NCBI GenBank assembly: GCA_965644495.1
Contig: CBFFSA010000020.1
Span: forward strand, 124,001 to 188,000
DNA: 64,000 bases
Source of the DNA: Perkinsela sp. CCAP 1560/9
Lineage: Eukaryota; Protista; Euglenozoa: Kinetoplastea
Direction: 5' to 3'
Each line of letters begins with the position of its first letter. The first letter of the stretch is position 1. This document shows positions 26,665 to 58,188 of this stretch, piece by piece. The notes beneath the pieces were generated by a model, which ran no database searches, had not been told where the DNA came from, and saw nothing but the letters and a program-made list of their open reading frames with translations. Both the position numbers and the translations under genes were made by a program.

Positions 26665-26694
26665 CGATAAAGATACAGTTTCTGTACCTTGTTG
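26665..26694 (+). other. Spliced-leader exon sequence at the 5' end of a retrotransposon
   Basis: CGATAAAGATACAGTTTCTGTACCTTGTTG contains the kinetoplastid SL core GATACAGTTTCTGTAC and ends in TTG; no GT donor follows. Confidence 0.88.
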
Positions 26695-29600
26695 AATTAT
26701 TTTTATTAACCCACTATTTTCCCTATCAGGGTCTCACCATGCCACACGACGACCTCTTCGATGCGAATGCAGTACCCATGGACGACGACTCTTTCCGTCA
26801 GGAAGAAATTTCGCACAACACGGGTGCTTGGGACCAATTTGCAGGAAACGCACATTTAATTCCCGGTCAGAGCTCCTACGATGAACTCTTGTACACAACA
26901 CCGATTCCCAAACATATCCCCAAACACTGGGCAAAAAGAGCCGCCAAGATCGCCGGAGAGGCTCCCACGCCGGACACGGGAAGAATGACGGAAGATGAAG
27001 AGACGAATCACTCCCTCGTCGTGGAAGCAAGCCCGAGAAACACACCGGAGGTTCCTGACGCCCAAGTACCTTCTCCAAACAAGGCCTCGAAGCGCAAGAA
27101 CATAAATCCGGTACCGATCCCGCAGCACTGTACTCAGCGCGTATGCCCAGCTGAAGGATGCACTTGGAAGACTCCTCCTCACGGTGGGCAATGGCAAGCA
27201 TTTTACAATCATGTGGCCCACCGACACGGAGAAAGCGTACCAACCACTTGGTGGGAGGGGGAGGGAAGATTTCTTTGCAAGGACTGCGGCAGGCACTACG
27301 ATAAGAACAAGGAGAATTCTCACCCCAAACAGTGCAAAGGCCGTAACCACCCCGTGCGATCTCAAACCCCACCTAGGCCAACGACAAGTCTCGAAAATGC
27401 AACTGAAATTCCTCCAGAAAACATGCTATCAACGTTGAGCTCTATCTGCGCGCTGCCCATAAGCACATGCAAAGATGTCCCCCATTCCTGTAGGTTTCTA
27501 TGGGCGAGCATTTTGACACAGGTCATGACATCTGCTGTGCAAGAAAACACAATGGAGGCATGGACGTTACTGGCAATGCTCCCTAAATGCGTCTTACCTG
27601 CACCTTACCGAGGCGGTCGCAAAGGACACACGTCATACTCTACATACGTGGAAAAAAGCATGGAACTCTGGCTAGAAGGGGAGTACCTCTTGCTCTGGGA
27701 ACAGGCCCTAAAGGATCACGCCAAAAAACGCTCCAAGCCTAGAAGTTCCGAAAATGAAGAAGAAAGAGCGGCAATCAGGGCAGAAATACTGTCACGTCAA
27801 GGGGAATACTCTAGGGGAATAGCCGCTCTAACCGCAGCACCCATGGCGCCGGACAACGAGGAGACCCTTGCGAAGCTTCTATAAAAGCACCCAAATCCTC
27901 ACGAAAACCCACTTGAGAACGATCTTCCACCGATTGAGGGTAATCCCCTGCGTCTGGAGGAAGTTTTCGCAGAGGGTCTTCTGCCGGAACAATGGGTCTA
28001 CGTCCAGAACACATCCAGGCCGCCATTTTGGAACACGCCGACAAGAAGGTGGGTCCTCTTTCGTTCCTCACTCGCCTCGTGAACCACATGCTCCAAGGAA
28101 AGGCACCGCCAGAGGTACAACTGTTCTACGCTGGAGCCCGTCTCTGCGCTCTGGAGAAAGGTGAAGAAGATGTCCGACCCATAGCAGCAGGCGAAACCCT
28201 CAGACGTCTAGTAAGCAAAGCGGCATGCGTCGCCGTAAAGGAGAAGGCTGAAACTTTATTCCGGGGAAGACAGTATGGTGTGGCTGCATCCGCGGGGGCC
28301 GAACGAGTAATTCATCTGTGCCGGAAAACAATGCTAAACAACATGGGGAGCGACAGTCTTGTTCTCTGTAAGGTAGACCTCAGAAATGCGTTCAACAACG
28401 TCAGCAGGCCTGTCTTCACTTTGCTCACACGTCTCAATTTTCCAGAACTTTCACCCTGGGTGGAATGGTGCTACACAAACCCGAGTTGTCTTACCTACGG
28501 GAATCACTTCCTATCCTCAGCCGAAGGCGTCCAGCAAGGTGACCCATTGGGTCCGCTTCTCTTCTCTCTAGTCCTTTCTGGGGTAACCGAGGAAATATCA
28601 TCCCGATCAAACCTAGATTCGCAACTATGGTATTTGGACGACGGAGTTCTCATGGGGGAGGCGGCGGAGGTTCGAAAGGCGCTTGACGTTTTTTCCGAGG
28701 TTGGTTCACAATGCGGGCTATTTCTGAATCCGAACAAGTGTGAAATAATAACGCCACCTGCCTCAGCCCATCACACGACTTTATTTCCGGAAATACCTAC
28801 CGCCAAAATTCGTGTTGACGGGAATTTCGATATTCTCGGATCCCCGATTGGGTCTGCGGAGCACTGCGCGGAGTTCCTAATGTCTCACGCCATCGAACCC
28901 GCACGCGAGACTCTCGCAGCAATAGGGCTAATAGGCGATCCACAAGTTGCCATCGCCCTCATCCGCCAGTGCACTGGCTTCTGCCAAATGGTGTACACTC
29001 TCCGCACCACACCCCCCCAGGCTCTTTTTCAACTTTGTAGCCTACTAGACGAAACCGTTCTTAAAGCTGTCGAGTGGGCACTTTTCCCCCTGGAACCCCA
29101 CGCACGTGACCAAATCCAACGAAGGAAACGCCACGGAGGTTTCGGCCTTAGGTCTGCAACACTCCACGCGACAGCCGCTTACGTTTCTTCCGTCGCGCAC
29201 GCCGCCGACATAGACGACTGGGATCCTACAGAGGCTGATGGATTCGCCATTTCGGTACAAGACGTAAACCGTAAAGCAGGAGTAGCGCTAGTGGATCCCA
29301 ACACGGGGCGCACACCCAAGCAGGACAAGCCACTCCCATACTCAGGCCACCATCACAACTTCCTCCCGAAAAGGAAACGCCCACGGAGCACTCAAAACAA
29401 AATGGAAGCGGACAGGGCAACCGCGCCGGAGATGGTCATCCCTCGACAGCAGCAACTCAGCCAGGCTATCTCACAGCAGGAATTCACCACAGCACCGAGC
29501 AGGCTGACCCTCGCACTCGCGCACGGTGGGTTTCAGAGTCGGGTAAGGGAGCAGGTAGCTGGGCTTTCGTGACGCCCTCTAGGAGCAAAGGATACGCCTT

Positions 29601-30830
29601 CACACCAACAGAGTTCCGCACGCTGTCCCGCTGGTGGCTGGGATCCGACATCTATCAAGAAGATCGCCCTTGCCCAGCGAAGGGATGCACATTACCTCTG
29701 CAGAAAAATGGGGAACATGCATTGTTATGTAAGAACGGACATGGCCTCATCACCCGTCACAACGCGGTCTGTGAGCAATTCACAGCATTCTGCAGAAAAG
29801 CCGACATAGCTCCGCAAAGGGAGAAAAGCCTGGGAAATCGTGGTCCAAGAGGGGGTCTCACCAGACCTGCTGACGTGTTTCTCCCGAATTACACCCTGGG
29901 AAGTGGTATGGTGTTAGACTTCGCAGTCACCCACGCACAGCAACTAAAGTATTTGGACTCTGTCCGGAATGCTAGCTGGGTGGCTGCGGGATCTTTCGCT
30001 GAACACTACTCAGCAACGAAGGATAAACAACGCCAGGAAGCGGAGGAAGCGAAATTACTTTTTACGGCCATGGTAGTTGAATCCTTTGGCTCGTGGAGTA
30101 AAAGCGCGATGGCTGTTTTGTGGAAGGTGGGGGCGTTACGCGCAAACGCGTCAAACGGTCTACTCACAGACACTCAAGCCCGAAATGACCTTCTCAAAGA
30201 GCTGAACGTGGCTCTCATGCGCTCCCAGGCCCGGATGATGGTCTCTAGGATAGTCGTCAGTGACCCTGACGCTCCCCTGGAAGGGGCCTAAGGGATCTCG
30301 GGAATACCCACTGGGACATAAACCGCTGGTCCGGATGCTGGTCGGTGCCGACAGGGTCTATGCTCACGCCTAGTCCGTCAGGGCTAGGTACCCCAAGTGA
30401 GGTAGGACAAGGGTAGGGAACTTTGTTCCTCCCCGTCGGCCAGCATCATGCTCCGCGACCGTGCCGCTGTCGGCACAGGCCCATTGCTTGCGCCCTCTCG
30501 TACAACAAGAGAAGGGTTAACAAGGCAAGCTGGGAGTGGTCGAAAGACCCGGTTCGGAACATGCATGAGGAAGATGGGAGCGCGAATGGATTGGAGAAGA
30601 CCTCGCCTCCCCCCTTTTTTATCATCAAAAACCCTCTTGTGGCGTAGGTGCGAGGCGAGGCAGAGGGAGACCTTACCCTCCCTGGAAAGGTGGAAGTTCG
30701 GTAAGGGGAAGTGGGAAAGTTGGGAAGTGGGAAAGTTGGGAAGTGGGAAGGTTGGGAAGTGGGAAAGTTGGTTCGCTAGTTTTTATATAGTTGTTAAAAA
30801 GAGGAAAAAGATTTAAATAAAGAAAAATAT
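26665..30830 (+). mobile_element. Second CRE-clade non-LTR retrotransposon, disrupted by small deletions
   Basis: C2H2 and CCHC fingers (26739-27884); RT VRPIAAGE, DLRNAFN, GVQQGDPLGP, WYLDDG (27992-29572); RLE CPAKGC..HALLC, RHN, RPAD (29569-30291); 3' boundary uncertain. Confidence 0.9.
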
Positions 30831-30971
30831 AATCTTTAAAAAAATTGCTAATTTGATTGCTTGTTTTCAAATCACTACCCCCCCCCCCCCCCAATGGACC
30901 TACTTGGTTCGTGTACTGGGTAAAAATATAGAGGCAATGCCGCGTTTCAAAAATTATAATACAAAAATAAA

Positions 30972-31516
30972 ACAGGCCCGCGCCTGCGCCCTCCCGTATA
31001 ACAAGGGAAGGGTTCACAAGCCAGGCCGAGGAGTGGTCGAAAGACCCGGTCCGGAACGCGCGAATGGTTAGGGAGTCACCCGCACGCCGGGTGAGGTGAA
31101 GCTGAGGGAGACCTTACCCTCCCTGAGAAGTTGAAAAGTGGGGTAGGGGAAAGTAGAGAAGTAGGGAGAAAAGTGGGAAAAGTAAGTCAAAGGGGGAGAA
31201 AGTGAGAGAGAAAGAGGGGAAAGTGGAAAAAAAAAAAAAAAAAAAAAAAAACAGGCCCGCGCCTGCGCCCTCCCGTATAACAAGGGAAGGGTTCACAAGC
31301 CAGGCCGAGGAGTGGTCGAAAGACCCGGTCCGGAACGCGCGAATGGTTAGGGAGTCACCCGCACGCCGGGTGAGGTGAAGCTGAGGGAGACCTTACCCTC
31401 CCTGAGAAGTTGAAAAGTGGGGTAGGGGAAAGTAGAGAAGTAGGGAGAAAAGTGGGAAAAGTAAGTCAAAGGGGGAGAAAGTGAGAGAGAAAGAGGGGAA
31501 AGTGGAAAATTTTCAA
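30972..31516 (+). mobile_element. Two tandem copies of the SINE-like unit
   Basis: Both start at ACAGGCCCGCGCC (about 279 bp apart), are separated by poly(A), and have the same body as 24418-24643. Confidence 0.88.
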
Positions 31517-31684
31517 CTCAATAAAATACATCCCACCTTTATGCCTTACAGATCAATGTTAATGGAGCCCATGCAAGTGGGGCTTGCACTGGCTGGCACA
31601 GATTGGCACTGGCTGGCATATAATTTATTTTATTTTATCACCCCATGCTGAGTCACAGGCCGCAAAAAACACACGTTCCGCCAG

Positions 31685-33979: not shown

Positions 33980-34088
33980 CTACAAAAACAGTTTCGTCGC
34001 ATCAATCAGTAAAATTCATGGGCGTCATGGAAGTAAGAATTGACAAAAAATGTCAATCTTCTTCTCAAAAGTGGCTACTGAAGGCTTC

Positions 34089-35505
34089 TGAAAAAGTGTC
34101 CAGCTGACCACCCCCAGAAAAAGTGTTCAGCTGGCCACCCCCTGAAAAAGTGTCCAGCTGACCACCCCGTGGAAAAATGGCCAGCTGGCTACCCCCTGGA
34201 AATCTGGCCAACTGGCCACCCCCTGAAAAGTTGACCAGCTGGCCACCCCCTGGAAAAGTGGCCAGCTGACCACCCCCTGGAAAAGTGGCCAGCTGGCCAC
34301 CCCTTTAAAAAGTGGCCAGCTGGCCACCTCCTGGAAAAGTGGCCAGCTGACTACCCCCTGGTAACGTGGCCAGCTGACCACCCCCTGGTAACGTGGCCAG
34401 CTGGCCACCCCCTGGAAAAGTGGCCAGCTGGCCACCCCTTTAAAAAGTGGCCAGCTGGCCACCCCCTGGAAAAGTGGCCAACTGGCCACCCCCGTGAAAA
34501 GGTGGCCACCCCCTGGAAAAGTGGCCAGCTGACCACCCCCTGGAAAAGTGGCCAGCTGACCACCCCCTGGTAACGTGGCCAGCTGGCCACCACCTGGAAA
34601 AGTGGCCAGCTGACCACCCCTTTAAAAAGTGGCCAGCTGGCCACCCCCTGGAAAAGTGGCCAAATGGCCACCCCCTGAAAAGTGACCAACTGGCCACCCC
34701 CTGAAAAGGTGGCCAGCTGGCCACCCCTTGAAAAAGTGGCCAGCTAACCACCCGCTTAAAAAATGGCCAGCTGACCATCCCCTGGAAAAGTGGCCAGCTG
34801 ACCACACCCTGGAAAAGTGGCCAACTGGCCACCCACTGGAAAAGTGGCCAGCTGGCCACCACCTGGAAAAGTGGCCAGCTGACCACACCCTGGAAAAGTG
34901 GCCAACTGGCCACCCACTGGAAAAGTGGCCAGCTGGCCACCACCTGGAAAAGTGGCCAGCTGACCACCCCTGGAAAAAGTGGCCAGCTGACCACCCCCTT
35001 AAAAAGTGGCCAGATGACCACCCCTTTAAAAAGTGGCCAGCTAGCCACCCCCTGGAAAAGTGGCCACCTGGCCACGCCCTGAAAAGGTGGTCAGCTGGCC
35101 GCCCCCTTAAAAAGTGGCTAGCTGGCCGCCCCCTGAAAAAGTGGCCAGCTGAGCACCCCCTGAAAAAGTGGCTAGCTGGCCGCTCACTGAAAAAGTGGCC
35201 AGCTGGCCACCTCCTGGAAAAGCGGCCAGCTGGCCATCCCCTGGAAAAGTGGCCAGCTGACCACCCCCTGGAAAAGTGGCCAGCTGACCACCCCCTGGAA
35301 AAGTGGCCAGCTGGCCACCCCCTGAAAAAGTGACCAGCTGCTCTTTCATGCAGGAGGTGGCCAGCTTGCGACTTTTTTTGGACGTCGCCATTCATCTTGA
35401 GTATATGAAATGCAAACTGTGTTTTTTGGTAGCCAGCTGGCCATTTTTCAAGGAGGTGGCCAGCTGACCATTGTCTCAGGGGGTGGCGAGCTGGCCACTT
35501 TTTGA
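34089..35505. repeat. 27-bp minisatellite (about 45 copies) with a palindromic core, followed by a few inverted copies
   Basis: Unit CTGGAAAAGTGGCCAGCTG(G/A)CCACCCC; core GTGGCCAGCTGGCCAC is a 16-bp palindrome. Confidence 0.95.
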
Positions 35506-36203
35506 AGGGCGAGAAAATCATACCTTTTTTTCGTTCATTTGTTATGCCGTCGGCGAGTGAAACGCGTTTCAAAAAGTGGTTCTGGAAGTTAGTTTAGGAG
35601 CTGAAAAATATTCCCCAAACGTTCAAACAGCTGTAGTCTGTTTGTGTGGGGAACATAATCAAGCATCTTCGCGTTTTTTCTGATTTGAAATATCCGTCTC
35701 TGAGCTGAATTCCGAGTCGCATTTTTGGTAAAAGGGCTCTAAAAACTGTTGAGTGTACTCGTTTTTTTTCATTTTTGGAGCATTACAGAGATTGATTGAA
35801 GAAAAATGTCTCTGTTTTTAAAAATTTGAAAAAATCGTTTTTATGCTCGTTTTATGCCCATTTTGGGCTCGCGGAATTAACCTTAGTAAGCGAGTTAGAT
35901 ACTCACCGTATCTCCCTCAATAAAAAATTATATGAAAAAGGGTTGCCGCAACTGCTTTTGCTACGCGAGTCTCTTTCGGCAGTCACGAAACCGACAATGT
36001 TGGGGTACTTTGCTGAAATTTCAGAGCACTTCTGTTCCCTTACCGACAAAGGAAAAGAAAAATTTTGGATTCGTATTTGCACCTTCGCCAATATTTCGCG
36101 ACGGAGTCAACGGAGCAACCCAAATGGTCCCAAAAGACATGGACGAGCGTATAGAAGCCTTTTTGAATATGATAGCTCTGCGAAATTGTGATCGCGTGGA
36201 TAC

Positions 36204-37307: not shown

Positions 37308-40025
37308 CGATGGCCGCAGGTCAGGGCCACTGCATATATTTTCGGCAGTGTTGGGGCTTAGCGCACCTCACCTTCCCCAGCTTTTTACCTCCACAGCACC
37401 GTTTTTAATATTCGTCGTATCTAGGTTTTTCTGTGGTTTTACTTAGTGTCTTGCAAAGACGGGCGATAAGGGTTTTACTGGAGGAACTTGACAACTTAAT
37501 ATTCCCCCCCTTACTTCACCACCCCCCTTACTTCACCACAAAGTATGGGTTTTGGGCCAAAAAGTGGAGGCTAAGTAAGGGGGGGGGTAACGGTATTCGG
37601 GAGCGGAGGGCTTGTAGCACATTCGGGTCACGAGAGCTTTGCATATGGCAAAGAGCTTCCCCGGTGCAAAGGTGCCATAATTGCGATATGTTTGTAAGAT
37701 TCCATCCGCGTGAGGTATATAAGGTTTCACTACTGGTGGCAGAGGCAAAGTTCATCCACTTCTTGATATGGCGGGTAGCTCTTTTTTGTAGGCGGAGTAT
37801 CAATGAATGAGTAAGGCTGGCATGAACAACGAATTGAAAACGCAACTTTGATAGGACGGCGTGTTGGTAGATCCATAGTTTGGATGAGAGGCTGTGTGCA
37901 TTGGCGCTGATTTTTTCGAGCCACGTTATCAGATTTTCGTCCGTTTATTTGAAGAGGATTTTCGACTGCTGGGCCCCTGGAGCAAGAGTCATTCCTAGAA
38001 AGCTGCTACCTTTGTCACATATATGGGGGATGCTGCTCCCGTGAATCAAAATCTTCGGTCTTCGAGTCATATAACCGGGATGGTTTGTGCCCTTCTCCAT
38101 AGACATACACTGTATTGATGTTTGTTACGTCTGCGTCGAAGAAGGAGATCACTCAAGGCTTGGGTGTGCTCAAGAGTCCCGTTAAGCTCCGGAAGAAACC
38201 CTTTCTGTATTGTAGGGTCAATGACACCAGCTTCCAGAAGATGAGTTATAAGTCGGTGCCCGATGATGCTGTGGAACAGTTTTCCGACAGCACTTGTAAG
38301 GGATATTGGTCGCCAATTTTTCGGATTTCCAGTGTCACCTTTCTTGTACGTATGAGTTTCGTTACAGCTGTCTTCCAAGTTTGAGGACAGATTTCATGAC
38401 GTAAGAGATCATTGTACGTTTGCGCCAGTGTTGAGTAGAGGGAAGGGCACCTTTTTAGAATTGCATTTGTGACAGTGTCGCTCCCCGGAGCGCTGCTAGA
38501 TCTTTTCCCTTTCAGAGCTTGGGCGATGTCGTCGCTAGTAATGTCTGCCCATTTCATTTCCACAAGTGCTCGGGGTCCGAGGAAACTGTACTCTGGAAGT
38601 TTGAATTCAGTTTCGGGCGCTGTCAGTACTTTATCAAAATGATCTTGGACATCGGCCAGCTGACACGTCGGGAATTGAGGCGAGGCTTGTGCATCTCGTA
38701 GTTCAGGTCGGCTTAATGTTTCCGCTGCCGCTGTCTATGGATTCCGTGTGAAACTTTCAAGGGCCCACCTTTCTTCCATCTCTTTTCGTTGTAACCGTGA
38801 TTCCTCCTTGTAAATCCTGATCAGTCTACTGCTCTCTTTAATTTGGATCTTTACTTTTTCACGATTAGATTTTCCGTGCGTATAGCGGAGAGATATTTTT
38901 TGGTGTCGAACATCTTTTTCAAGTTCCAGGATATTTCTTTCAAGCGCAAGGGGTCGGCAACGATTTTGAGCATGACCATTGCGAGTGCGTAAGAGAAATC
39001 CTCGTGTTGGGTTGATCTCAGTGGCCAGGTCGTATGCTGATACAGCAAGAGCTGCACATAAGACTTGTGCGTTCTCGAGGGCTTCTGATGGACTCGTAGC
39101 AGGACGCAGTAACTCCGCGCATTTTGCGTATGCATTTTTCTGGACTGTTTCCCATTGGTCATCGCTTAGTTTAACCATTACTTTACCCCCTTCTATTGAA
39201 CGGTGTGTTCGAAACAGCTGCTCCACAGCAATCTGGCGGTTTGAACTTTGTGGAGTGGCATTCTTGTCACCATGAGGGGTTGAAATTGTAGTCGGAGGTA
39301 CGTCTTCGGTTTCTTGAGTCGGAAGGGAAGGAGGTCTAGTGATTTTGCAACATGGGTGTTTGTACTTCATTTTGTCTTTACACTTGTGGTGACATGGGCT
39401 AGATTTAGTTGTCGTAGCTATCTTCCCAGTTTCTGTTTGTCTAATGTTGTGTGGAGATTCTTTCTGGATTACCGTCTGTTGATAGTCCGGGGTATCGATA
39501 GCGTCTTCTTCTTTTTTCAGTGTAATGGAAAGGTGGCGGAGCGCTGGGATGTCTTGCCCACCAAGCCGCTTCCGGATAGCTTTTCCCAGCGAACCCGGTG
39601 ATTTGTATTTGGCGGAGAGCTGCAACACAGGGTCGTTTAGGAGAGTGAACCAGCTTGTATGCCGATGAACGATATCCGGAGTCCCTGTTCTATGTATTTC
39701 GATGTAGTCGCATGCGTTGTTCGATATCAGCTCTGTTATCGTAGCGGCTTCGGCCACAAGGTCGTGAGCTTGAGACTGTTTGGCTAATAGTTTCGTAATT
39801 GCGGCTTCGGCGCCCTGCAGGGATCCTATTCGTTTTCTAACAAGTGCAGATTTGCAGGCTGATTTTACATCGGGAAAGTAATGCCAACAGGATTCGGTAA
39901 TAGCCCGGATTTTAAGGGGGCGTGTCCTGCTTTGAATAAAATGCAGGAGGTCCTGCAGCGCATGCTTATGAGTTTTCTGTGGGTGGCTCGGAGTCATAAA
40001 GGAGAAAACATATAATATAAGAAAT

Positions 40026-40044
40026 CAACAAGGTACAGAAACTG
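40026..40044 (-). other. Partial (19-nt) spliced-leader exon at the 5' end of a retrotransposon
   Basis: Reverse complement CAGTTTCTGTACCTTGTTG, 28 nt upstream of the ATG at 39997. Confidence 0.85.
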
Positions 40045-40964
40045 AGGGAGTTGGTCCATCCTTGTTCAGTATACTGGCCAAGGATAGCAACTCCCCATTA
40101 TCTCGGCGTAGCAAACACGCCTTGGCTTGCCTGGCACTGAGATCAGCCAATGGAAAAAAACGCTTTTTTTCGTTAGAGGCCTCCTTTCTCAGCCCAGGGG
40201 CTTCCCACTTAAGGGGCCCGTTCCCATAACCAAGTGATCTCCCCGGCAACACGATTTCATTCGTGCGTCAAGAAGGCTGGGCTATGGGACCAGGGAGCTC
40301 TAGAACAAGTGCAGCAACTTGTGAGCCTAATTCGTTGGACATGAAATGATAGTGTGATTAAATTAGTTCATAGTAAAATTATTTATAAAAAATAATTACA
40401 TATTCGCTTATTCTGAAAATTGGTAATGCAAACGTTTGAACGGCGGCCATTCTCATGTATTGGTCGCTTTGCTCTTGCATAACTTCCGCATGCCACCTTT
40501 TCTTCATCACCCTTTTCATAGGAATAAATTGTTGTTCGGAGAATGGTTTTTTGGAGAATGTTTTACTGTTACTATTTTGTCAGGGCGCGGAATAACATCT
40601 AAACTGATATTTATACTGATATTTTCTGGGATTTTGTCTCATGTTTTGTCTCATACTTCTCAAGACCATTAGAGCTACACTTTTTCCCCATACTTAAATT
40701 TAGCTTGTATTATTGCAACGCGCGATATTTTGTGCTTACCCATACAGTAATAGTCAACACAATAAGCTTAAAATATGATAATGACTAGTACGGTGATAAT
40801 TTTCTGTATCTCTATTTTAAGAAATTTTATTTATCCGTGCATTTAAAAACAATTCAATGCTGACACACGCGACCCCTTCCCTCACGGCCTTCATCTTAGC
40901 TTCAATCCACCCGAAAAGGGTAGATTGAACCGGTAACCATTCTGTCCAAAGTTCTGCAGGTGTT

Positions 40965-42050: not shown

Positions 42051-42091
42051 TCTCTCTTTTTGATTATTGAGCTCTCACGACACGAATTTTA

Positions 42092-42258
42092 TACCCCCCC
42101 GGAAATTGGTGACCCCCCTGTATAGTTACTATAAACTTTTTTTAAAAACTTTAAAAAGGTTCGGCGAAAGATTTTCGCCAAGTTGATATTTTAGTTAATT
42201 GTTTTTCCGGAAAAAAATCCGATCTTGGTGGACCCTTCCTGTAGATACCGGGGGGTTA
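42092..42258. mobile_element. Tc1-like MITE, repeated in each array unit
   Basis: TACCCCCCCGG ... CCGGGGGGTTA inverted ends; GTGACCCCCC motif also seen near the left end of the Tc1 at 6124. Confidence 0.5.
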
Positions 42259-42381
42259 TTTGTTCACCTTTTCAGTAAGCGGTCGTAGTAAGTAGGTGCC
42301 TCCACAGTCATCCCAGTGTGAAACACAACCTGTAATTGTACTTATTTACACTACTTCAAGGTTAGGTAAACATTGATTATT

Positions 42382-48225: not shown

Positions 48226-48951
48226 ATGATGTTTTGCTCACTGCTTTCGGCTGATGTAACGGAACCGTTAAGAAAGGAAGCCCGAAAAGAAACGAACTCT
48301 TCTGACACGACGCTTTCCACAAGTAGTTCTAATGTGACTGGAAAATCTCGTCCATCCAAAGTCAGTGCCGTATCGTTACCCGTGGAGTACGATTTGATGA
48401 GACTCGTAGAAAACCCTCCACGCTCATGGTCCACCGATACTCCGGGATGTAGATGGGATGGGGTCAGATGTAACGACAAGGGCGACGTGATTTGGATGAA
48501 CTGGAGTGGCAGGATGGGCGAGGACAGTAGCAAGAAACTGCAAGGTCAGTTCAATGTAAAATATTTGCCGTACGAACTGAAACATTTACGCCTAACGGGA
48601 AATTCTCTGTCGGGTGAGTTTCCGTTCGATCAGTTGCCTCCGAAATTGGAAGACATTGACATATCGAGGAACCAGTTCACGGGTACTCCAGATTTTCGTC
48701 ATTTGCCACCCTTTCTAGTCTATCTTAATATGTCCGACAATAGATTTCATGGTCATATTGAATTTGATTTCGTGCACGAAAACTTGCGTCAAATGAGCTT
48801 AGCTTTTAATGCAGAACTTGAAGGCTTCCTAAAAATCAGAGACGAGATAAAGAATCTGTATTATACTGTAGCACGAACAAAGATTACAGTAAGCAATGGT
48901 GTGATGGTCCTAAATCGACCGATCGGGAGCGTTTGTGGAATATGTGGATGA
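48226..48951 (+). CDS. LRR protein, array copy 3
   Basis: Protein identical to copy 1. Confidence 0.88.
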   Translation: MMFCSLLSADVTEPLRKEARKETNSSDTTLSTSSSNVTGKSRPSKVSAVSLPVEYDLMRLVENPPRSWSTDTPGCRWDGVRCNDKGDVIWMNWSGRMGEDSSKKLQGQFNVKYLPYELKHLRLTGNSLSGEFPFDQLPPKLEDIDISRNQFTGTPDFRHLPPFLVYLNMSDNRFHGHIEFDFVHENLRQMSLAFNAELEGFLKIRDEIKNLYYTVARTKITVSNGVMVLNRPIGSVCGICG

Positions 48952-51147
48952 AGGTACGTTGATATCTACAGTGGGGAATAGGCACGGAAAACGTCAGCAT
49001 ACAAAAAATACTTCAACGGTTGCAAAGATATAATACATTGTGTTAGATGGGCCTATTTGAACAATAAATAGCGTTATAATAGGCGCAATAATGCTTCACT
49101 TTGACCATAAAATAATAATATAGTGTTAGTTTGAATATTATCTTGTTATTTATAAAAAATAATTACATATTCGCTTATTCTGAAAATTGGTAATGTAAAC
49201 GTTTGAACGGCGGCCATTCTCATGTATTGGTCGCTTTGCTCTTGCATAACTTCCGCATGCCACCTTTTCTTCATCACGCTTTTCAGAGGAATAAATTATT
49301 GTTCGGAGAATATTTTTTTCGGAGAATGGTTTACTGTTACTATTTTGTCAGGGCGCGGAATAACATCTAAACTGATATTTATACGGATATTTTCTTGGAT
49401 TTTTCCATGTTTTGTCTCATACTTCTCAAGACCATTAGAGCTACACTTTTTCCCCATACTTAAATTTAGCTTGTATTATTGCAACGCGCGATATTTTGTG
49501 CTTACCCATACAGTAATAGTCAACACAATAAGCTTAAAATATGATAATGACTAGTACAGTGATTATTTTCTGTATCTTTATTTTAAGAAATTTTATTTAT
49601 CCGTGCATTTAAAAACAATTCAATGCTGACACACGCGACCCCTTCCCTCACGGCCTTCATCTTAGCTTCAATCCACCCGAAAAGGGTAGATTGAACCGGT
49701 AACCATTCTGTCCAAAGTTCTGCAGGTGTCAATGAGTATCGACGACTACGATAACTGTTTCATTTATCAGCGCCTTGATGCGTTGAATGATGATGTCTAC
49801 TGCATCTTGTGGGCTATACGCTTTTGCAACAGCACGTCCGACAGCGGTATTATCTGTTAAAATAAAAGCGACGGATGGATTGTGTGCCATCAACTGATTT
49901 TTCACAACCCTTTTTCGAAGGCTATAGCCTCGTCCATAGCAATCGGAAGTTCCTCCCCTTGCAAACTTTGATATTCAACACCTCTTTCATTTCTAAATAC
50001 TCCTCTTCGTAAGGCAGTAATCTCATCACTCAGAGTGTAAGTAGCCCAACGGGTAGGTGTGGGATCGACTGTTATGCTCAAAATAGAATCTTTTTATGTG
50101 GTATAGATGCGATTTTGCATGGGACCACAAAGGCTTTAATGACAATATCAAATGTTTCATAGAATCGACAGGACTCTTGATTTCGTCCAATTCCGCGTCC
50201 CAGTTGACCATTTTGCCAAGAGAACTCTGAGCTTTCGATGCTCTCCCGAGTCCTATACGGTCCGCTGCCACTACTGATCCCGCGAAGCGGTAAAAACCTA
50301 GGAGGCTAAAGTACGTACGAGGAGTGTATTTCATTGTTGTCCGCACTATTTGATGCCATGGTGGTAAGGGAGTTCAGCACACGCATATCTAATATCGCCC
50401 GAGCCTTTGATTCAGTTTTCAGCACGGCCAAATACTTAGATAGAACAGGTATTGTGCCAGTGGGGTTGCTTTGAAGTCCTCAAGAGCGCCACACGACGTG
50501 AGGTACGCCAAGTGCCGAAACCAACGTTTTCCGAATGTATTAGTTGTGTTCCGATGTATTAGTTGTGATGGGCAGTGGTTCCTTATTCTGAAGAGGGTCC
50601 CTATTCAGAAGGCTAGTCGCGTGCACTGTATAAGGTGTATTGGCTATGGATGTGCCAAGCTCAAATCTGCCACCTCCTACGGTTTTTAACTCCGCAAGAG
50701 GTATATCGTTGTCCGCTATTCTCCCGCGAACGCCGGCCGTTTCTTTGCTAGAGAACGAAACATGGTGCAAGACAATACCTGGACCCGAACTACGCGTACT
50801 ATCTAATTGTGCAAAGTCTCTCTTTTTGATTATTGAGCTCTCACGACACGAATTTTATACCCCCCCGGAAATTGGTGACCCCCCTGTATAGTTACTATAA
50901 ACTTTTTTTAAAAACTTTAAAAAGGTTCGGCGAAAGATTTTCGCCAAGTTGATATTTTAGTTAATTGTTTTTCCGGAAAAAAATCCGATCTTGGTGGACC
51001 CTTCCTGTAGATACCGGGGGGTTATTTGTTCACCTTTTCAGTAAGCGGTCGTAGTAAGTAGGTGCCTCCACAGTCATCCCAGTGTGAAACACAACCTGTA
51101 ATTGTACTTATTTACACTACTTCAAGGTTAGGTAAACATTGATTATT

Positions 51148-51873
51148 ATGATGTTTTGCTCACTGCTTTCGGCTGATGTAACGGAACCGTTAAGAAAGGA
51201 AGCCCGAAAAGAAACGAACTCTTCTGACACGACGCTTTCCACAAGTAGTTCTAATGTGACTGGAAAATCTCGTCCATCCAAAGTCAGTGCCGTATCGTTA
51301 CCCGTGGAGTACGATTTGATGAGACTCGTAGAAAACCCTCCACGCTCATGGTCCACCGATACTCCGGGATGTAGATGGGATGGGGTCAGATGTAACGACA
51401 AGGGCGACGTGATTTGGATGAACTGGAGTGGCAGGATGGGCGAGGACAGTAGCAAGAAACTGCAAGGTCAGTTCAATGTAAAATATTTGCCGTACGAACT
51501 GAAACATTTACGCCTAACGGGAAATTCTCTGTCGGGTGAGTTTCCGTTCGATCAGTTGCCTCCGAAATTGGAAGACATTGACATATCGAGGAACCAGTTC
51601 ACGGGTACTCCAGATTTTCGTCATTTGCCACCCTTTCTAGTCTATCTTAATATGTCCGACAATAGATTTCATGGTCATATTGAATTTGATTTCGTGCACG
51701 AAAACTTGCGTCAAATGAGCTTAGCTTTTAATGCAGAACTTGAAGGCTTCCTAAAAATCAGAGACGAGATAAAGAATCTGTATTATACTGTAGCACGAAC
51801 AAAGATTACAGTAAGCAATGGTGTGATGGTCCTAAATCGACCGATCGGGAGCGTTTGTGGAATATGTGGATGA
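51148..51873 (+). CDS. LRR protein, array copy 4
   Basis: Protein identical to copy 1. Confidence 0.88.
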   Translation: MMFCSLLSADVTEPLRKEARKETNSSDTTLSTSSSNVTGKSRPSKVSAVSLPVEYDLMRLVENPPRSWSTDTPGCRWDGVRCNDKGDVIWMNWSGRMGEDSSKKLQGQFNVKYLPYELKHLRLTGNSLSGEFPFDQLPPKLEDIDISRNQFTGTPDFRHLPPFLVYLNMSDNRFHGHIEFDFVHENLRQMSLAFNAELEGFLKIRDEIKNLYYTVARTKITVSNGVMVLNRPIGSVCGICG

Positions 51874-54069
51874 AGGTACGTTGATATCTACAGTGGGGAA
51901 TAGGCACGGAAAACGTCAGCATACAAAAAATACTTCAACGGTTGCAAAGATATAATACATTGTGTTAGATGGGCCTATTTGAACAATAAATAGCGTTATA
52001 ATAGGCGCAATAATGCTTCACTTTGACCATAAAATAATAATATAGTGTTCGTTTGAATATTATCTTGTTATTTATAAAAAATAATTACATATTCGCTTAT
52101 TCTGAAAATTGGTAATGTAAACGTTTGAACGGCGGCCATTCTCATGTATTGGTCGCTTTGCTCTTGCATAACTTCCGCATGCCACCTTTTCTTCATCACG
52201 CTTTTCAGAGGAATAAATTATTGTTCGGAGAATATTTTTTTCGGAGAATGGTTTACTGTTACTATTTTGTCAGGGCGCGGAATAACATCTAAACTGATAT
52301 TTATACGGATATTTTCTTGGATTTTTCCATGTTTTGTCTCATACTTCTCAAGACCATTAGAGCTACACTTTTTCCCCATACTTAAATTTAGCTTGTATTA
52401 TTGCAACGCGCGATATTTTGTGCTTACCCATACAGTAATAGTCAACACAATAAGCTTAAAATATGATAATGACTAGTACAGTGATTATTTTCTGTATCTT
52501 TATTTTAAGAAATTTTATTTATCCGTGCATTTAAAAACAATTCAATGCTGACACACGCGACCCCTTCCCTCACGGCCTTCATCTTAGCTTCAATCCACCC
52601 GAAAAGGGTAGATTGAACCGGTAACCATTCTGTCCAAAGTTCTGCAGGTGTCAATGAGTATCGACGACTACGATAACTGTTTCATTTATCAGCGCCTTGA
52701 TGCGTTGAATGATGATGTCTACTGCATCTTGTGGGCTATACGCTTTTGCAACAGCACGTCCGACAGCGGTATTATCTGTTAAAATAAAAGCGACGGATGG
52801 ATTGTGTGCCATCAACTGATTTTTCACAACCCTTTTTCGAAGGCTATAGCCTCGTCCATAGCAATCGGAAGTTCCTCCCCTTGCAAACTTTGATATTCAA
52901 CACCTCTTTCATTTCTAAATACTCCTCTTCGTAAGGCAGTAATCTCATCACTCAGAGTGTAAGTAGCCCAACGGGTAGGTGTGGGATCGACTGTTATGCT
53001 CAAAATAGAATCTTTTTATGTGGTATAGATGCGATTTTGCATGGGACCACAAAGGCTTTAATGACAATATCAAATGTTTCATAGAATCGACAGGACTCTT
53101 GATTTCGTCCAATTCCGCGTCCCAGTTGACCATTTTGCCAAGAGAACTCTGAGCTTTCGATGCTCTCCCGAGTCCTATACGGTCCGCTGCCACTACTGAT
53201 CCCGCGAAGCGGTAAAAACCTAGGAGGCTAAAGTACGTACGAGGAGTGTATTTCATTGTTGTCCGCACTATTTGATGCCATGGTGGTAAGGGAGTTCAGC
53301 ACACGCATATCTAATATCGCCCGAGCCTTTGATTCAGTTTTCAGCACGGCCAAATACTTAGATAGAACAGGTATTGTGCCAGTGGGGTTGCTTTGAAGTC
53401 CTCAAGAGCGCCACACGACGTGAGGTACGCCAAGTGCCGAAACCAACGTTTTCCGAATGTATTAGTTGTGTTCCGATGTATTAGTTGTGATGGGCAGTGG
53501 TTCCTTATTCTGAAGAGGGTCCCTATTCAGAAGGCTAGTCGCGTGCACTGTATAAGGTGTATTGGCTATGGATGTGCCAAGCTCAAATCTGCCACCTCCT
53601 ACGGTTTTTAACTCCGCAAGAGGTATATCGTTGTCCGCTATTCTCCCGCGAACGCCGGCCGTTTCTTTGCTAGAGAACGAAACATGGTGCAAGACAATAC
53701 CTGGACCCGAACTACGCGTACTATCTAATTGTGCAAAGTCTCTCTTTTTGATTATTGAGCTCTCACGACACGAATTTTATACCCCCCCGGAAATTGGTGA
53801 CCCCCCTGTATAGTTACTATAAACTTTTTTTAAAAACTTTAAAAAGGTTCGGCGAAAGATTTTCGCCAAGTTGATATTTTAGTTAATTGTTTTTCCGGAA
53901 AAAAATCCGATCTTGGTGGACCCTTCCTGTAGATACCGGGGGGTTATTTGTTCACCTTTTCAGTAAGCGGTCGTAGTAAGTAGGTGCCTCCACAGTCATC
54001 CCAGTGTGAAACACAACCTGTAATTGTACTTATTTACACTACTTCAAGGTTAGGTAAACATTGATTATT

Positions 54070-54801
54070 ATGATGTTTTGCTCACTGCTTTCGGCTGATG
54101 TAACGGAACCGTTAAGAAAGGAAGCCCGAAAAGAAACGAACTCTTCTGACACGACGCTTTCCACAAGTAGTTCTAATGTGACTGGAACATCTCGTCCATC
54201 CAAAGTCAGTGCCGTATCGTTACCCGTGGAGTACGATTTGATGAGACTCGTAGAAAACCCTCCACGCTCATGGTCCACCGATACTCCGGGATGTAGATGG
54301 GATGGGGTCAGATGTAACGACAAGGGCGACGTGATTTTGATGAACTGGAGTGGCAGGATGGGCGAGGACAGTAGCAAGAAACTGCAAGGTCGGCTCAATG
54401 TAAAATATTTGCCGTACGAACTGAAACATTTACACCTAACGGGAAATTCTCTGTCGGGTGAGTTTCCGTTCGATCAGTTGCCTCCGAAATTGGAAGACAT
54501 TGACATATCGAGGAACCAGTTCACGGGTACTCCAGATTTTCGTCATTTGCCACCCTTTCTAGTCTATCTTAATATGTCCGACAATAGATTTCATGGTCAT
54601 ATTGAATTTGATTTCGTGCACGAAAACTTGCGTCAAATGAGCTTAGCTTTTAATGCAGAACTTGAAGGCTTCCTAAAAATCAGAGACGAGATAAAGAATC
54701 TGTATTATACTGTAGCACGAACAAAGATTACAGTAAGCAATGGTGTGATGGTCCGAAATCGACCGAGCGGGAGCGTTTGTGGAATACATGGACCAAGGTA
54801 A
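54070..54801 (+). CDS. LRR protein, array copy 5 (variant)
   Basis: Seven amino-acid changes plus an altered C-terminus relative to copies 1-4. Confidence 0.88.
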   Translation: MMFCSLLSADVTEPLRKEARKETNSSDTTLSTSSSNVTGTSRPSKVSAVSLPVEYDLMRLVENPPRSWSTDTPGCRWDGVRCNDKGDVILMNWSGRMGEDSSKKLQGRLNVKYLPYELKHLHLTGNSLSGEFPFDQLPPKLEDIDISRNQFTGTPDFRHLPPFLVYLNMSDNRFHGHIEFDFVHENLRQMSLAFNAELEGFLKIRDEIKNLYYTVARTKITVSNGVMVRNRPSGSVCGIHGPR

Positions 54802-55910
54802 GTTAATATCTGTAATGGGGAATAGGCACGGAAAACGTCAGCATACAAAAAATATTTCAACGGTTTCAAAGATATAATACATTGTGTTAGATGTCCCTAT
54901 TTGAATAATATAGCGTTATTTGAATAATATAGTGTTAGTTTGAATATTATAGTGTTATTTATAAATAGTGTTTACAGATTCGCATATTCTGAGGATTGGT
55001 AATGCAAACGTTTGATCGGGGCCATTCTCATGTATTGGTCGCTTTGCTCTTGCATAACTTCCGCATGCCACCTTTTCTTCATCACCCTTTTCATAGGAAT
55101 AAATTATTGTTCGGAGAATGTTTTTTCGGAGAATGTTTTACTGTTACTATTTTGTCAGGGCGCGGTATAACATCTAAACTGATATTTATACTGATATTTT
55201 CTGGGGGTTTTTCCATGTTTTGTCTCATACTTCTCAAGACCATTAGAGCTACACTTTTTCCCCATACTTAAATTTAGCTTGTATTATTGCAACGCGCGAT
55301 ATTTTGTGCTTACCCATACAGTAATAGTCAACACAATAAGCTTAAAATATGATAATGACTAGTACAGTGATTATTTTCTGTATCTTTATTTTAAGAAATT
55401 TTATTTATCCGTGCATTTAAAAACAATTCAATGCTGAAACACGCGACCCCTTCCCTCACGGCCTTCATCTTAGCTTCAATCCACCCGAAAAGGGTAGATT
55501 GAACCGGTAACCATTCTGTCCAAAGTTCTGCAGGTGTCAGTGCTTATCGAACATCCAAAGAAGTACGTGAAAGCCAAAACGTATGGTGGTGAAAGTGGAG
55601 TGAGTGTAGTGACCCAAAAAGTAGTGAGTGTAGTGAGGTCACTACAGACCACCTCCAGGGTATGAATAATCCCCCTCGTCACCTGTTTCTTGATCAGATT
55701 CATCTGGAGAAGGTTTCCGAGTCTGACGCATTTATCAGATAATGATTTCTTCTCTCTCTTACTTACTTTATTCTTTTATTCAATTTTCCACAAAATAGGC
55801 AAAATACATGGAACCTGTTTAAACGTTTATAAAGAGTCAGGTTAGAGAACTTGAAAAACGCAGAGGAAACGTCGCAGAGGAAAGCAAATTAACCAATTTC
55901 TCTTTGTTCC

Positions 55911-56776
55911 ATGATTCAGTTTTTGCAGTGTAGTGAACACCAAGAACCACTAAAGAAACGAATAAAGAAGGAAAGCGACCTGTCCACGGCTGCACCTACG
56001 GGAATCGCGTCCTCCACTAGAGGTACCCAGCCTGGGAAAGTAAAAGGCGCAACGTTCCCGCAAGAATACGACTTAATGCGACTTGTTGCTAATATCGTAT
56101 CATATCATGATCGTAATAATATGTGTAGAGAATGTATTTGAGGCACTAAATCCCGATCTTTTCCCCACAGGTGGATTCGCTTCACATTCTTGGAGTACAA
56201 ATACATCGGCATGTGAATGGATGGGCGTAAAGTGTGATGAAAATGGATTTGTTCGTGAAATTCAATGGTCGAATCTCGGTCTTACTGGTGGGTGGAAGTT
56301 CAAATTTTTGCTCTCAACGTTAATACAATTTTCCGTTGGACAAAACTTTCTGTCTGGTGACTTTTGTGTTGAATATTTGCCTCCCGCTTTGGAAAAGCTT
56401 GCTATTAACAACAACAAATTTACAGGAACCCTTGATTTACAGAAATTACCGGCTTCTATTATATATTTTGACGTTCGTTGCAACTCGCTAAAGGGTCATG
56501 TTTCTTTTCATTCCCTGCCGCCTCATCTGAAAACATTTTTTAACATTGCTCAATAATATTTCAGGGAAAGTTGATTTTTCTGCGCTTTCTACTTCATTGA
56601 AGAATTTTGGTGTTTGTGGATGCGATCTTGAAGGAACGTTTGATGCCAATTTGAAAGATTTTTATTACAGTGTAAGTCTTACAAATATTACCGTGATCAA
56701 CGACGGGCTTTCCCGCTCGGAACCAAAAGAAGAAGAAGAGATTCAGATAGTGGAGGTTAATATGGTACATGTGTAG
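55911..56776 (+). pseudogene. LRR pseudogene with two frameshifts
   Basis: KVKGATFPQEYDL, WSTNTSACEWMGVKC and LRRs spread over three ORFs. Confidence 0.82.
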
Positions 56777-56843
56777 CAATTTTCATCCTCCCGTGGATGG
56801 GGACCCCATGTCGGGGGTTATTTATATTGGTTCGATAGAAATA

Positions 56844-57286
56844 AAGGGGGGGCTCGTCTATTGTTGGCAACTTTTTTTTTGCCAACAATAGCCGATTGCC
56901 AACAATAGATGATACAATACCCCCCTTAACCAACAATAGATGGAACGGCAATAACATCATCTATTGTTGGCAATCAAGGTAACTTGCACTACTTTTATCA
57001 CCTACACTACCGACAGCCCCCCTCACATACATACATAGTATGAATAGGGTCGAGGATACATACATCCTATGTATGTATCCTCGAAAAAGTGGAAAAAAGC
57101 GGTCTTAAGCGGATATTCCACCTAGGATGACAAGTCACCTAGTACCGATTTCGAGTTCATACATGGCTATGGTTCAAAACAAAATCAAAATTAATTAAAT
57201 GTCAACAATAGCCGATTGCCAACAATAGATGATTTTATTAGTTTGCCAACAATAGATGATTGCCAACAATAGACGCACCCCCCCTT
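56844..57286. mobile_element. MITE with multiple subterminal CCAACAATAG repeats and an internal palindrome
   Basis: TA-AAGGGGGGGCTCGTCTATTGTTGGCAA ... TTGCCAACAATAGACGCACCCCCCCTT-TA; hairpin TCGAGGATACATACAT/ATGTATGTATCCTCGA near 57050-57084. Confidence 0.85.
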
Positions 57287-57772
57287 TAGTTGAAAATAAA
57301 TAGAAGAGATTCTAATTGCATAGTTGGTTTAATATTAATTTTACATTGTATCACAGCAAGTACGTAACTTAAATTGTAAACACCAGTAATTGGATCTTAC
57401 TGAATGTTCGTCTTGTACAAGCGATCTCACCTTAGCCGTAAAAATATAGCCTACACATACAATTTAAATATTTTTATAACGAACGTTTACCAATTACAGT
57501 TCACTAACTGAAAACGTGTACAATTCGACGATAGAAAATATCAATTTAAGTTTTATTTATCTCCTACTTTCCCTATTCAGAGCCATGTAATGAACTTGAA
57601 AAGCCCCATGACCAAAAAATCCCCAGGAAGCCAGTGCTACGAAAGGCACCAGTTACTTCTACAAACACATTAGATATACTCTTACATGTTACGGGTTATA
57701 ACACAGTTTTATTTTGAAAGGACTTTACCTAATAATTTTACATATACGTTTTATATCCTTGAATCTCACATT

Positions 57773-58123
57773 ATGGACGATGGGTCAGACCTCAGACGTG
57801 GAAAAGTACGCCGTGAATTATTACCACAGGAAAACGTACTTGAAGAATTTTTAAGAGGGGAAACACTTCGACATCCTACATGGATTACAGAAAAGAAACG
57901 ATTCTTTGGAGGCATCAAAAAGGTGTCTCCATGTACATGGAGAGGCATCACGTGCGACCCGGAAAATAATATCATCAGCATCATTGGGAGTTACGGCTCT
58001 CCGATCCTTGAAGGGAATTTAAGTTGGCGTGATCTCCCACCCACACTGGTCAGGTTGCAGTTACATCAGTACCCCAAACTTCGCGGCGTTATCGACTTGA
58101 CCAATTTTCCTCCATGTCTTAAT
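57773..58123 (+). pseudogene. LRR gene 5' half, interrupted by a retrotransposon
   Basis: KVRRELLPQE, SPCTWRGITC cap and first LRRs; ends at the SL-headed insertion. Confidence 0.85.
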
Positions 58124-58153
58124 CGATAAAGATACAGTTTCTGTACCTTGTTG
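58124..58153 (+). other. Spliced-leader exon sequence at the 5' end of a retrotransposon
   Basis: 30-mer identical to 26665-26694. Confidence 0.9.
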
Positions 58154-58188
58154 CTTGTTGTTTTTTTTTTCTAAACTGTATCTCCAAC

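What the first reader, a model, noticed from the sequence alone, without database searches (positions are those of the whole stretch)
26665..58153. Retrotransposons of two clades begin with the spliced-leader exon (SL-capped retrotransposition)
Seen: the identical 30-mer CGATAAAGATACAGTTTCTGTACCTTGTTG forms the exact 5' end of a CRE element (26665) and a HERO-like element (58124). Its last 19 nt head a third element on the minus strand (40026-40044). The match ends at TTG each time and is followed by three unrelated 28-44 nt UTRs and the ORF ATG, never by a GT intron. No SL sequence appears at the 3' ends, and the targets are not SL genes (a poly(A) tail, an LRR gene, a Ulp1 relic). Known: GATACAGTTTCTGTAC...TTG is the kinetoplastid SL core, and CRE/SLACS/CZAR insert into SL RNA genes. 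Inference: these elements retrotranspose from SL-capped RNA to dispersed sites. The cap could come from trans-splicing out of polycistronic transcripts or from co-transcription of a master copy in an SL gene. Both long copies stop at about the same place, as expected if the methylated cap-proximal bases block RT.
Basis: partly seen in the sequence, partly recalled or inferred. Interest (0 to 1): 0.92.

Follow-up and report, generated by a model that had tools for sequence, protein, structure and literature searches.

The report
Retrotransposons headed by spliced-leader copies
In this trypanosome-like protist, jumping genes of two very different reverse-transcriptase lineages start with a DNA copy of the cell's own spliced leader, so they were copied from RNAs carrying that leader; the same was found on other windows of this genome, and how the leader is renewed each round is still open.

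Summary
The 30-mer is exact at 26665 and 58124, and its last 19 nt lie at 40044-40026 (minus strand).

It is the 3' part of the real 38-nt spliced leader (SL). Two tandem SL RNA genes lie next to a 5S rRNA gene on another contig, each with the exon followed by GTATGAG. A metagenome relative has the identical exon.

The SL 19-mer occurs 489 times exactly in the 21-Mb assembly, and 655 times with up to 2 mismatches. It is joined exactly at the exon end to more than 70 different leaders.

Retrotransposition from SL-bearing RNA is well supported. In three recombinase-type families on other loci, an AG acceptor site and its SL-joined product lie side by side. One 2015 contig, probably RNA, joins the SL to a gene array that has no SL in its DNA.

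- There is no common stop near the cap. Most copies reach SL nt 1-3.
- The 19-mer is preceded by a conserved 342-nt structured repeat.
- The "CRE" and "HERO" clade labels are unverified, though both elements are R2-type.
- No AG-bearing master was found for the AATTATTT-leader LINEs.

A by-product: retrocopies read T at SL nt 2, where the genes have A.

This scan had already reported SL-headed retroelements on at least eight other windows of this genome.

The parts
26665..26694 (+). SL relic (SL nt 9-38; could start at nt 7 because an A run precedes it) heading the CRE-like LINE
   Evidence: Exact match. Identical to the exon of the SL RNA genes, L032:1805-1842:-. The four other ~100% copies share the A run, the 30-nt head and the leader, but not the upstream module.
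26695..26738 (+). 5' leader of the CRE-like LINE, starting AATTATTT
   Evidence: The same 8-nt start follows the SL in 21 of 79 sampled contexts.
26739..27884 (+). ORF1 of the CRE-like LINE (381 aa)
   Evidence: Weak LsmAD hit. 23 of 90 sampled SL-headed units have a homologous ORF1.
27992..30291 (+). RT ORF (27992-29572) and, in another frame, the C-terminal zinc-knuckle plus nuclease-like region (29569-30291)
   Evidence: RVT_1 E=8e-18. The C-terminal part is 63% identical to the uninterrupted relative P0126. The frame change may be real or an assembly indel.
30292..30963 (+). 3' UTR and tail of the CRE-like LINE; the end is approximate (30846-30963)
   Evidence: Repeat families D12, D15 and D16 and the sequence. 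The same tail type precedes the next SL head in L074.
24405..26664 (+). Head-to-tail chain of 5'-truncated tail modules, each ending in an A run; its last A run is the landing site of the CRE-like copy
30964..31512 (+). Two more tail modules that close the chain
19763..24417 (+). Fourth LINE (RT in ORF 21543-24374), 5'-truncated by about 530 nt and so without a head; its full-length relative L099 is SL-headed
   Evidence: 92% aa identity to the L099 unit.
58124..58153 (+). SL relic (nt 9-38) heading the HERO-like LINE
   Evidence: The flank-to-SL junction is also present in a contig of DNA run X2 (record 1).
58154..58188 (+). 5' leader; its first 7 nt repeat the SL end
   Evidence: The repeat is absent from copy L109.
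58189..62775 (+). Single 1528-aa ORF with RT, CCHC knuckle and restriction-like endonuclease
   Evidence: RVT_1 E=3e-32. Residues 772-1478 align to solved R2 proteins from the RT through the nuclease, E=4e-32.
62776..62868 (+). 3' UTR with no poly(A). The part shared with other copies ends at 62865; TAA at 62866-62868 may be a variable tail.
   Evidence: Contig breaks and differing flanks after 62862-62865 in runs X2-X4.
57760..58123 (+). LRR gene, upstream half; it ends with codons CTT AAT
   Evidence: Translation.
62869..63400 (+). LRR gene, downstream half; it resumes in frame at GTC
   Evidence: Other copies are followed by LRR codons (LSYNKFTG).
40026..40044 (-). SL nt 20-38 in front of the third (HERO-like) element
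38735..40025 (-). 28-nt leader and 420-aa ORF, a degenerate HERO-like paralogue; a weak RT fragment follows at 38067-38378
   Evidence: 39-42% aa identity to the N-terminal 700 aa of the HERO-like ORF. Weak RVT_1 hit.
40045..40386 (-). Conserved structured 342-nt repeat ending ...CCCT, directly upstream of SL nt 20
   Evidence: 92.5% identical to L023/L024 and 81% to L006. Fold z = -4.4. About 40 genomic matches, with the last ~115 nt occurring as inverted pairs 1-10 kb apart. No Rfam match.

Best explanation
The three heads are DNA copies of the cell's own spliced leader. They arose when reverse transcriptases of R2-type LINEs copied element RNAs that carried the SL at their 5' end, most probably added by trans-splicing. 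Shown: the SL is genuine; it is joined exactly at its exon end to the element leaders; it lies inside the inserted DNA at non-SL-gene sites; head length varies between copies. Inferred: the enzyme usually runs to SL nt 1-3. The 5' junction is then made at an A run of an older tail, either by insertion there or by a jump of the enzyme onto another RNA's poly(A), or at one codon boundary of LRR genes. This trims the head to different lengths. Still open: how the AATTATTT-leader LINEs renew the head each generation.
For: SL identity:
- Two tandem SL RNA genes lie beside a 5S rRNA gene.
- The same exon with a different promoter occurs in a metagenome contig.
- Five or six retroposed SL RNA copies end at about nt 105 followed by an A run.

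Scale:
- 489 exact 19-mers, 655 with up to 2 mismatches, control 0-1.
- 274 copies keep at least 34 nt.

Junction:
- In 79 distinct sampled contexts the match always ends at ...TTG.

Trans-splicing:
- In L066/L094 the source reads ...TTAG|ACAG|ACTTTTC, and both SL|ACTTTTC and SL|ACAGACTTTTC products exist.
- L081 and L094/L095 show the same for two more families.

RNA:
- A 579-nt contig of run X5 (probably RNA) joins SL nt 2-38 to the leader of a 15-copy tandem array. That array has no DNA-encoded SL within one mismatch.

Heads are remade per event:
- 99%-identical HERO-like copies have 30-nt and 28-nt heads at different flanks.
- SL nt 2 varies within single families, for example L061 against L096.
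- Heads are 75% exact while the element proteins differ by up to 45-70%.
Against: - No source copy with AG in front of the AATTATTT leader exists in the assembly (0 hits). Ten of 79 sampled SL-joined contexts fit the same pattern.
- Some families occur with and without a short prefix between SL and leader, and the shorter junction is not preceded by AG.
- The host array leader seen on the X5 contig is preceded in the genome by AT, not AG.
- All five CRE-like copies share the same A run plus 30-nt head.
- The GTAC-type SINE heads share point mutations (L026 and L027). At least in that family, heads can be inherited as DNA.
- RNA evidence rests on one contig of a run whose RNA nature is a guess.
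Confidence: 0.78

Rival explanations
1. One-time capture. An ancestor acquired the SL once, and the relic is now the element's own DNA-encoded 5' end. It is re-transcribed each round from an internal start or by 5' processing, so the RNA imitates a trans-spliced mRNA without being spliced.
For: - No AG-bearing masters for the AATTATTT LINEs.
- Identical 30-nt heads in all five CRE-like copies.
- Recurring 28-nt heads in L030 and L108.
- Shared head mutations in GTAC-type SINEs.
- The conserved AATTATTT start could be a signal.
Against: - Heads differ between 99%-identical copies.
- SL nt 1-2 vary within families.
- Heads stay identical to today's SL while leaders and proteins have diverged widely.
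- No HDV-like ribozyme was found at the HERO-like 5' end by Rfam.
- Nothing tested here shows promoter activity.
Confidence: 0.12
2. Co-transcription. A master copy sits inside an SL RNA gene and is transcribed from the SL promoter, as proposed for SLACS/CRE.
For: Relatives of these LINEs (CRE, SLACS, CZAR, NeSL) are known to live in SL genes (established knowledge). The assembly may lack part of the SL gene array.
Against: - Both assembled SL genes are uninterrupted.
- All seven exon-plus-intron sites were inspected and none holds an element.
- Many unrelated families, including recombinase-type elements and SINEs, would each have to sit exactly at the exon-intron boundary.
- The AG-source and product pairs show real trans-splicing.
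Confidence: 0.03
3. The head is added during reverse transcription. After reaching the 5' end of an unspliced element RNA, the enzyme jumps onto the 3' end of a free SL exon (the trans-splicing intermediate) or onto another SL-bearing RNA.
For: - Junctions without AG and optional prefixes.
- Partial SL pieces in front of full heads in L056, L063, L072, L083, L086 and L090.
- Poly(A)-to-SL chains in the window.
- End-to-end template jumping is known for R2 enzymes (established knowledge).
Against: - The free SL exon is a rare, spliceosome-bound intermediate.
- The junction is clean in most copies.
- The idea cannot explain the RNA-level SL junction of the host array.
- It cannot explain the AG-exact junctions.
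Confidence: 0.05

Closest known systems
Dinoflagellate retrogenes with relict DinoSL (PMC5585692, PMC6050394, PMC12014239)
   Same: A DNA-encoded spliced-leader relic at the 5' end marks a copy made from trans-spliced RNA. Stacked or partial relics record repeated rounds.
   Different: There the copies are mostly host genes, and the leader is 22 nt. Here the carriers are the mobile elements themselves (autonomous R2-type LINEs, SINE-like and recombinase-type elements) in a kinetoplastid-type genome. Heads usually run to the cap-proximal bases.
CRE1/CRE2, SLACS, CZAR (trypanosomatids) and NeSL-1 (nematodes): SL-gene-specific RLE LINEs
   Same: RT followed by a zinc knuckle and a restriction-like endonuclease, with an association with the spliced leader.
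   Different: Those elements insert into SL RNA genes at a fixed position inside the exon, so the SL is target DNA. Here the SL relic is at the element's own 5' end. It ends exactly at the exon 3' end and sits at poly(A) tails or LRR genes.
R2 elements (solved structures 9nl3, 9dou, 8gh6)
   Same: The HERO-like ORF aligns from the RT through the nuclease. Insertion is site-specific, here at an LRR codon boundary. Chains are compatible with R2-type template jumping.
   Different: R2 frees its 5' end from the rRNA co-transcript with an HDV-like ribozyme. No such ribozyme was detected here, and the 5' end is an SL.
L1Tc/ingi with the Pr77 internal promoter (PMC1874656, PMC8190864)
   Same: Kinetoplastid LINEs that must make a translatable RNA inside polycistronic units.
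   Different: Pr77 gives unspliced transcripts. The elements here carry the SL.

Membership tests
Retrocopies of SL trans-spliced RNA | The relic is identical to the exon of the organism's SL RNA gene | tested here: met
Retrocopies of SL trans-spliced RNA | The relic ends exactly at the exon 3' end and is followed by unrelated leaders, not by the intron | tested here: met
   79 distinct contexts. Only the SL genes and retroposed SL RNAs continue with GTATGAG.
Retrocopies of SL trans-spliced RNA | Source copies carry an AG acceptor where the product carries the SL | tested here: inconclusive
   Met for three recombinase-type families on other loci. Zero hits for AG plus the AATTATTT leader of the LINE superfamily that includes the window's CRE-like copy. 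The HERO-like family could not be tested.
Retrocopies of SL trans-spliced RNA | The SL is present on RNAs whose genes lack it | tested here: inconclusive
   One contig of run X5 joins the SL to the leader of a tandem array that has no DNA-encoded SL. That the run is RNA is a guess, and the genomic dinucleotide there is AT.
R2-type (RLE) non-LTR retrotransposons | RT followed by a CCHC knuckle and a PD-(D/E)xK-like nuclease, with no APE domain | tested here: met
   HERO-like: alignment to R2 structures over residues 772-1478. CRE-like: the motifs were read by eye in the C-terminal region shared with P0126. No PF03372 domain in either.
CRE clade | Insertion at a fixed site inside SL RNA gene exons | tested here: not met
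   The copy lies after a poly(A) tail. The SL genes are intact.
CRE clade | RT groups with CRE/SLACS/CZAR in a tree | not testable with these tools
   No reference sequences were at hand. The nearest named hits are from sponges and dinoflagellates, and the length filter of that search may hide SLACS-size proteins.
HERO clade | RT groups with HERO elements in a tree | not testable with these tools
   Named distant hits are from sponge, turtle, Daphnia and Caenorhabditis. No HERO references were at hand.
Kinetoplastid-type SL RNA gene | A ~38-39-nt exon starting AAC with the CAGTTTCTGTAC core, a GT donor, a short RNA, and tandem units linked to 5S rRNA | tested here: met
   Retrocopies indicate an RNA of about 105 nt.

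The most novel reading that the evidence does not exclude
SL-headed LINE copies are themselves the masters, and the head is renewed without any AG acceptor. Either the DNA-encoded leader lets the element's own transcript pass as a trans-spliced mRNA (self-encoded SL mimicry), or the reverse transcriptase adds the SL by jumping onto the free SL exon. The zero count of AG-bearing sources and the AG-less junction variants leave this open.
Probability: 0.15. Interest if true: 0.9.

Novelty: new variant of a known kind. Interest (0 to 1): 0.68.

Why it matters
- It shows that mobile elements in a polycistronic, trans-splicing genome use the host's SL route to make their RNA, and that their enzymes copy that RNA almost to the cap.
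- The relics date and count retrotransposition events.
- They give exact 5' ends for many families and mark trans-splice sites without RNA data.
- The systematic T (sometimes G) at SL nt 2, against A in three gene copies, may be a genomic record of a cap-proximal base modification.
- I found no report of SL-headed retrotransposons in kinetoplastids in the searchable literature. That library is incomplete.
- The finding is not new to this scan. At least eight other windows of the same genome were reported with the same reading.

Tried and rejected
- Rfam scans found nothing relevant. The whole window at gathering scores gave no match. The 342-nt repeat gave only chance hits. The HERO-like 5' end gave no HDV-like or other ribozyme.
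- The idea that the 342-nt repeat split an SL relic was tested with a pattern for the expected left junction (SL nt 9-19 plus the inverted repeat end). It gave 0 hits with one mismatch allowed, so this stays unresolved.
- I thought the HERO-like head might be a mutated full-length SL, because TCTTAAT upstream resembles SL nt 2-8. I rejected this: those bases are the LRR codons CTT AAT.
- An empty-site allele of the HERO-like insertion was sought in runs X2-X4. No joint skipping the element was seen. Contigs only were available, so this proves nothing.
- No Ulp1 relic was found in ORFs between 36107 and 38563 beside the third element.
- A paper search for the SL sequence itself gave 0 papers.
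After that I used only counts, places and loci already held, and did not read further genome letters through wildcard patterns. Two look-ups of encoding contigs in a public ENA assembly gave L108 and L109.


Full report
**Observation.** The 30-mer is exact at 26665-26694 and 58124-58153 on the plus strand. Its last 19 nt are exact at 40044-40026 on the minus strand. No shuffle of the window gave such matches. Each is followed by a short leader and an ATG, and none by GT. The window is G000:C20:124001-188000 of a 21.0-Mb assembly in 110 contigs.

**Is it the spliced leader?** Yes.
- Seven places in the assembly have the exon end followed by GTATGAG.
- Two of them are true genes: a 297-bp tandem pair on C1 with identical promoters, next to a 5S rRNA gene. 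The exon is 38 nt (L032:1805-1842:-), starts AACTTT and holds the kinetoplastid core.
- The others are retroposed SL RNAs. They match the gene from nt 3-5 to about nt 105, then run into A runs and unrelated flanks.
- A metagenome contig (L110) holds an SL RNA gene with the identical exon, a different promoter region and a diverged intron tail.

**Scale and anatomy.**
- The 19-mer occurs 489 times exactly and 655 times with up to 2 mismatches. Of these, 274 keep at least 34 nt.
In them the SL is joined, always exactly after ...TTG, to 79 distinct downstream sequences.
- Of 90 units with 900 nt of downstream sequence, 23 have an ORF1 like the window's CRE-like element. Six are HERO-like and two resemble the window's fourth LINE. 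The rest are short non-coding or recombinase-type elements.
- In the unbiased sample (the first 30 places of C1), head lengths are: 36 or more (8 sites), 32 (2), 31, 28 (4), 27, 24, 23, 22, 21, and 19 (5). So there is no common stop near the cap, and full-length heads are the mode.

**The elements of the window.**
- The HERO-like element spans 58124 to about 62865. Its single ORF aligns to solved R2 proteins from the RT through the CCHC knuckle and the restriction-like nuclease.
- It interrupts an LRR gene exactly between codons CTT AAT and GTC. Other copies are followed by LRR codons at the same point of the repeat unit. It has no poly(A). In run X2 its body is about 5-8 times as deep as the flanks, and the assembly holds five copies of at least 98% identity.
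- An independent 99%-identical copy (L109) has a 28-nt head, another flank and no CTTGTTG duplicate.
- The CRE-like element spans 26665 to about 30900. It has an ORF1, an RT ORF and a frame-shifted C-terminal region with a zinc knuckle and a nuclease-like motif, 63% identical to the uninterrupted relative P0126.
- It lies directly after the A run of a tail module, inside a head-to-tail chain of truncated tails. Its four ~100% copies elsewhere share only the A run, the head and the leader.
- The two RTs share only 27% identity over the core. "Two lineages" therefore holds, but the clade names could not be tested.
- The third element is a degenerate HERO-like paralogue.
- A fourth LINE (19763-24417) is a 5'-truncated member of a family whose full-length copy L099 is SL-headed.

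**Evidence for trans-splicing.** Three recombinase-type families on other loci show the source and the product side by side.
- In L066 and L094 the genomic source reads ...TTAG|ACAG|ACTTTTC. One product is SL joined to ACTTTTC and another is SL joined to ACAGACTTTTC. Two adjacent AGs were therefore both used.
- L081 and L094/L095 give two more AG-exact cases.
- A 579-nt, high-depth contig of run X5 (2015, probably RNA) holds SL nt 2-38 joined to a leader. In the genome that leader heads a 15-copy 2.77-kb tandem array, and no DNA copy of it carries the SL within one mismatch.

**What does not fit.**
- No place in the assembly has AG in front of the AATTATTT-type leader (0 hits). Ten of 79 sampled SL-joined contexts fit the same pattern.
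- Three families occur with and without a short prefix (AATTATTTT, AATTATTTCCCC, AATT) between SL and leader. The shorter junctions are not preceded by AG.
- The array leader of the X5 contig is preceded by AT in all 15 genomic copies. This may be a strain difference.
- GTAC-type SINE heads share point mutations, so heads can also be inherited.
- I therefore keep three rival routes for how LINE heads are renewed. The main reading, that SL-bearing RNA was the template, gets 0.78.

**The third head.**
- The 19-mer is preceded by a 342-nt structured repeat (fold z = -4.4). This repeat abuts SL nt 20 in front of three different LINE families.
- One of those families, the L006 type, elsewhere carries full heads after poly(A): L070, L091 and L092.
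- The repeat's last ~115 nt occur as inverted pairs 1-10 kb apart, and only the long end touches the SL piece.
My test for the split-relic junction was negative.

**By-product.**
- In 67 non-redundant retrocopies, SL nt 2 reads T in 47, A in 15 (mostly merging into A runs), G in 4 and C in 1.
- Retroposed SL RNAs read G there, and the X5 contig reads T.
- All three gene-context copies read A. The letter varies within single families.
- The simplest reading is a modified cap-proximal adenosine that reverse transcriptases misread. This is an inference. SL gene variants missing from the assembly are not excluded.

**Literature and earlier scan notes.** SL relics in retrogenes are established for dinoflagellates (PMC5585692, PMC6050394). 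I found nothing on SL-headed retrotransposons in kinetoplastids or diplonemids. This scan had already reported the phenomenon on at least eight other windows of this genome. My counts and the AG-pair test agree with those notes.

Noticed in passing
L032:1805-1842:- against the heads in L010, L015, L053, L096 and others: SL nt 2 is A in all three gene-context copies. In retrocopies it is T in 47 of 67 (A 15, G 4, C 1), in retroposed SL RNAs it is G, and in the probable RNA contig of run X5 it is T. This may be the trace of a cap-proximal base modification.
   Followed up: partly
window 40347-57900: Six tandem copies of a 2922-bp unit (99% identical), each with a 244-aa LRR ORF. The array lies between the third element and the HERO-like insertion.
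   Followed up: partly
window 33980-35400: More than 40 copies of a 27-nt tandem repeat under a 316-aa ORF (34622-35572, minus strand) with no Pfam hit.
   Followed up: no
window 36237-37307: ORF with a DDE_1 (pogo/Tc5-type) transposase domain and a PHD-like zinc finger. It is probably a DNA transposon relic.
   Followed up: no
window 21077-21687: Four tandem copies of a 147-148-nt unit at the overlap of the two ORFs of the 5'-truncated LINE.
   Followed up: no
G000:C2:321182-359989: A 15-copy 2.77-kb tandem array whose leader is joined to the SL in the X5 contig. The two genomic bases before the junction are AT, not AG. The gene was not identified.
   Followed up: partly
L072, L062, L056, L063, L083, L086, L090, L015: Partial SL pieces lie directly in front of, or behind, complete heads, for example SL followed by its own last 16 and 10 nt in L072. 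These are signs of repeated rounds or of template switching.
   Followed up: partly
L109:6150-6330: A (G)TACATTTT-type non-coding element with a 29-nt SL head has inserted inside a 99%-identical copy of the HERO-like element.
   Followed up: no
L085 vs L040, L040 vs L082, L088 vs L064: The same leader occurs with and without a short prefix (AATTATTTT, AATTATTTCCCC, AATT) directly after the SL. AATTATTT starts 21 of 79 sampled leaders.
   Followed up: partly
G000:C20:10884-10984 and G000:C49:34326-34426: The same retroposed SL RNA copy with the same flanks lies on two contigs, so the assembly holds duplicated or uncollapsed regions. Copy counts are therefore approximate.
   Followed up: no
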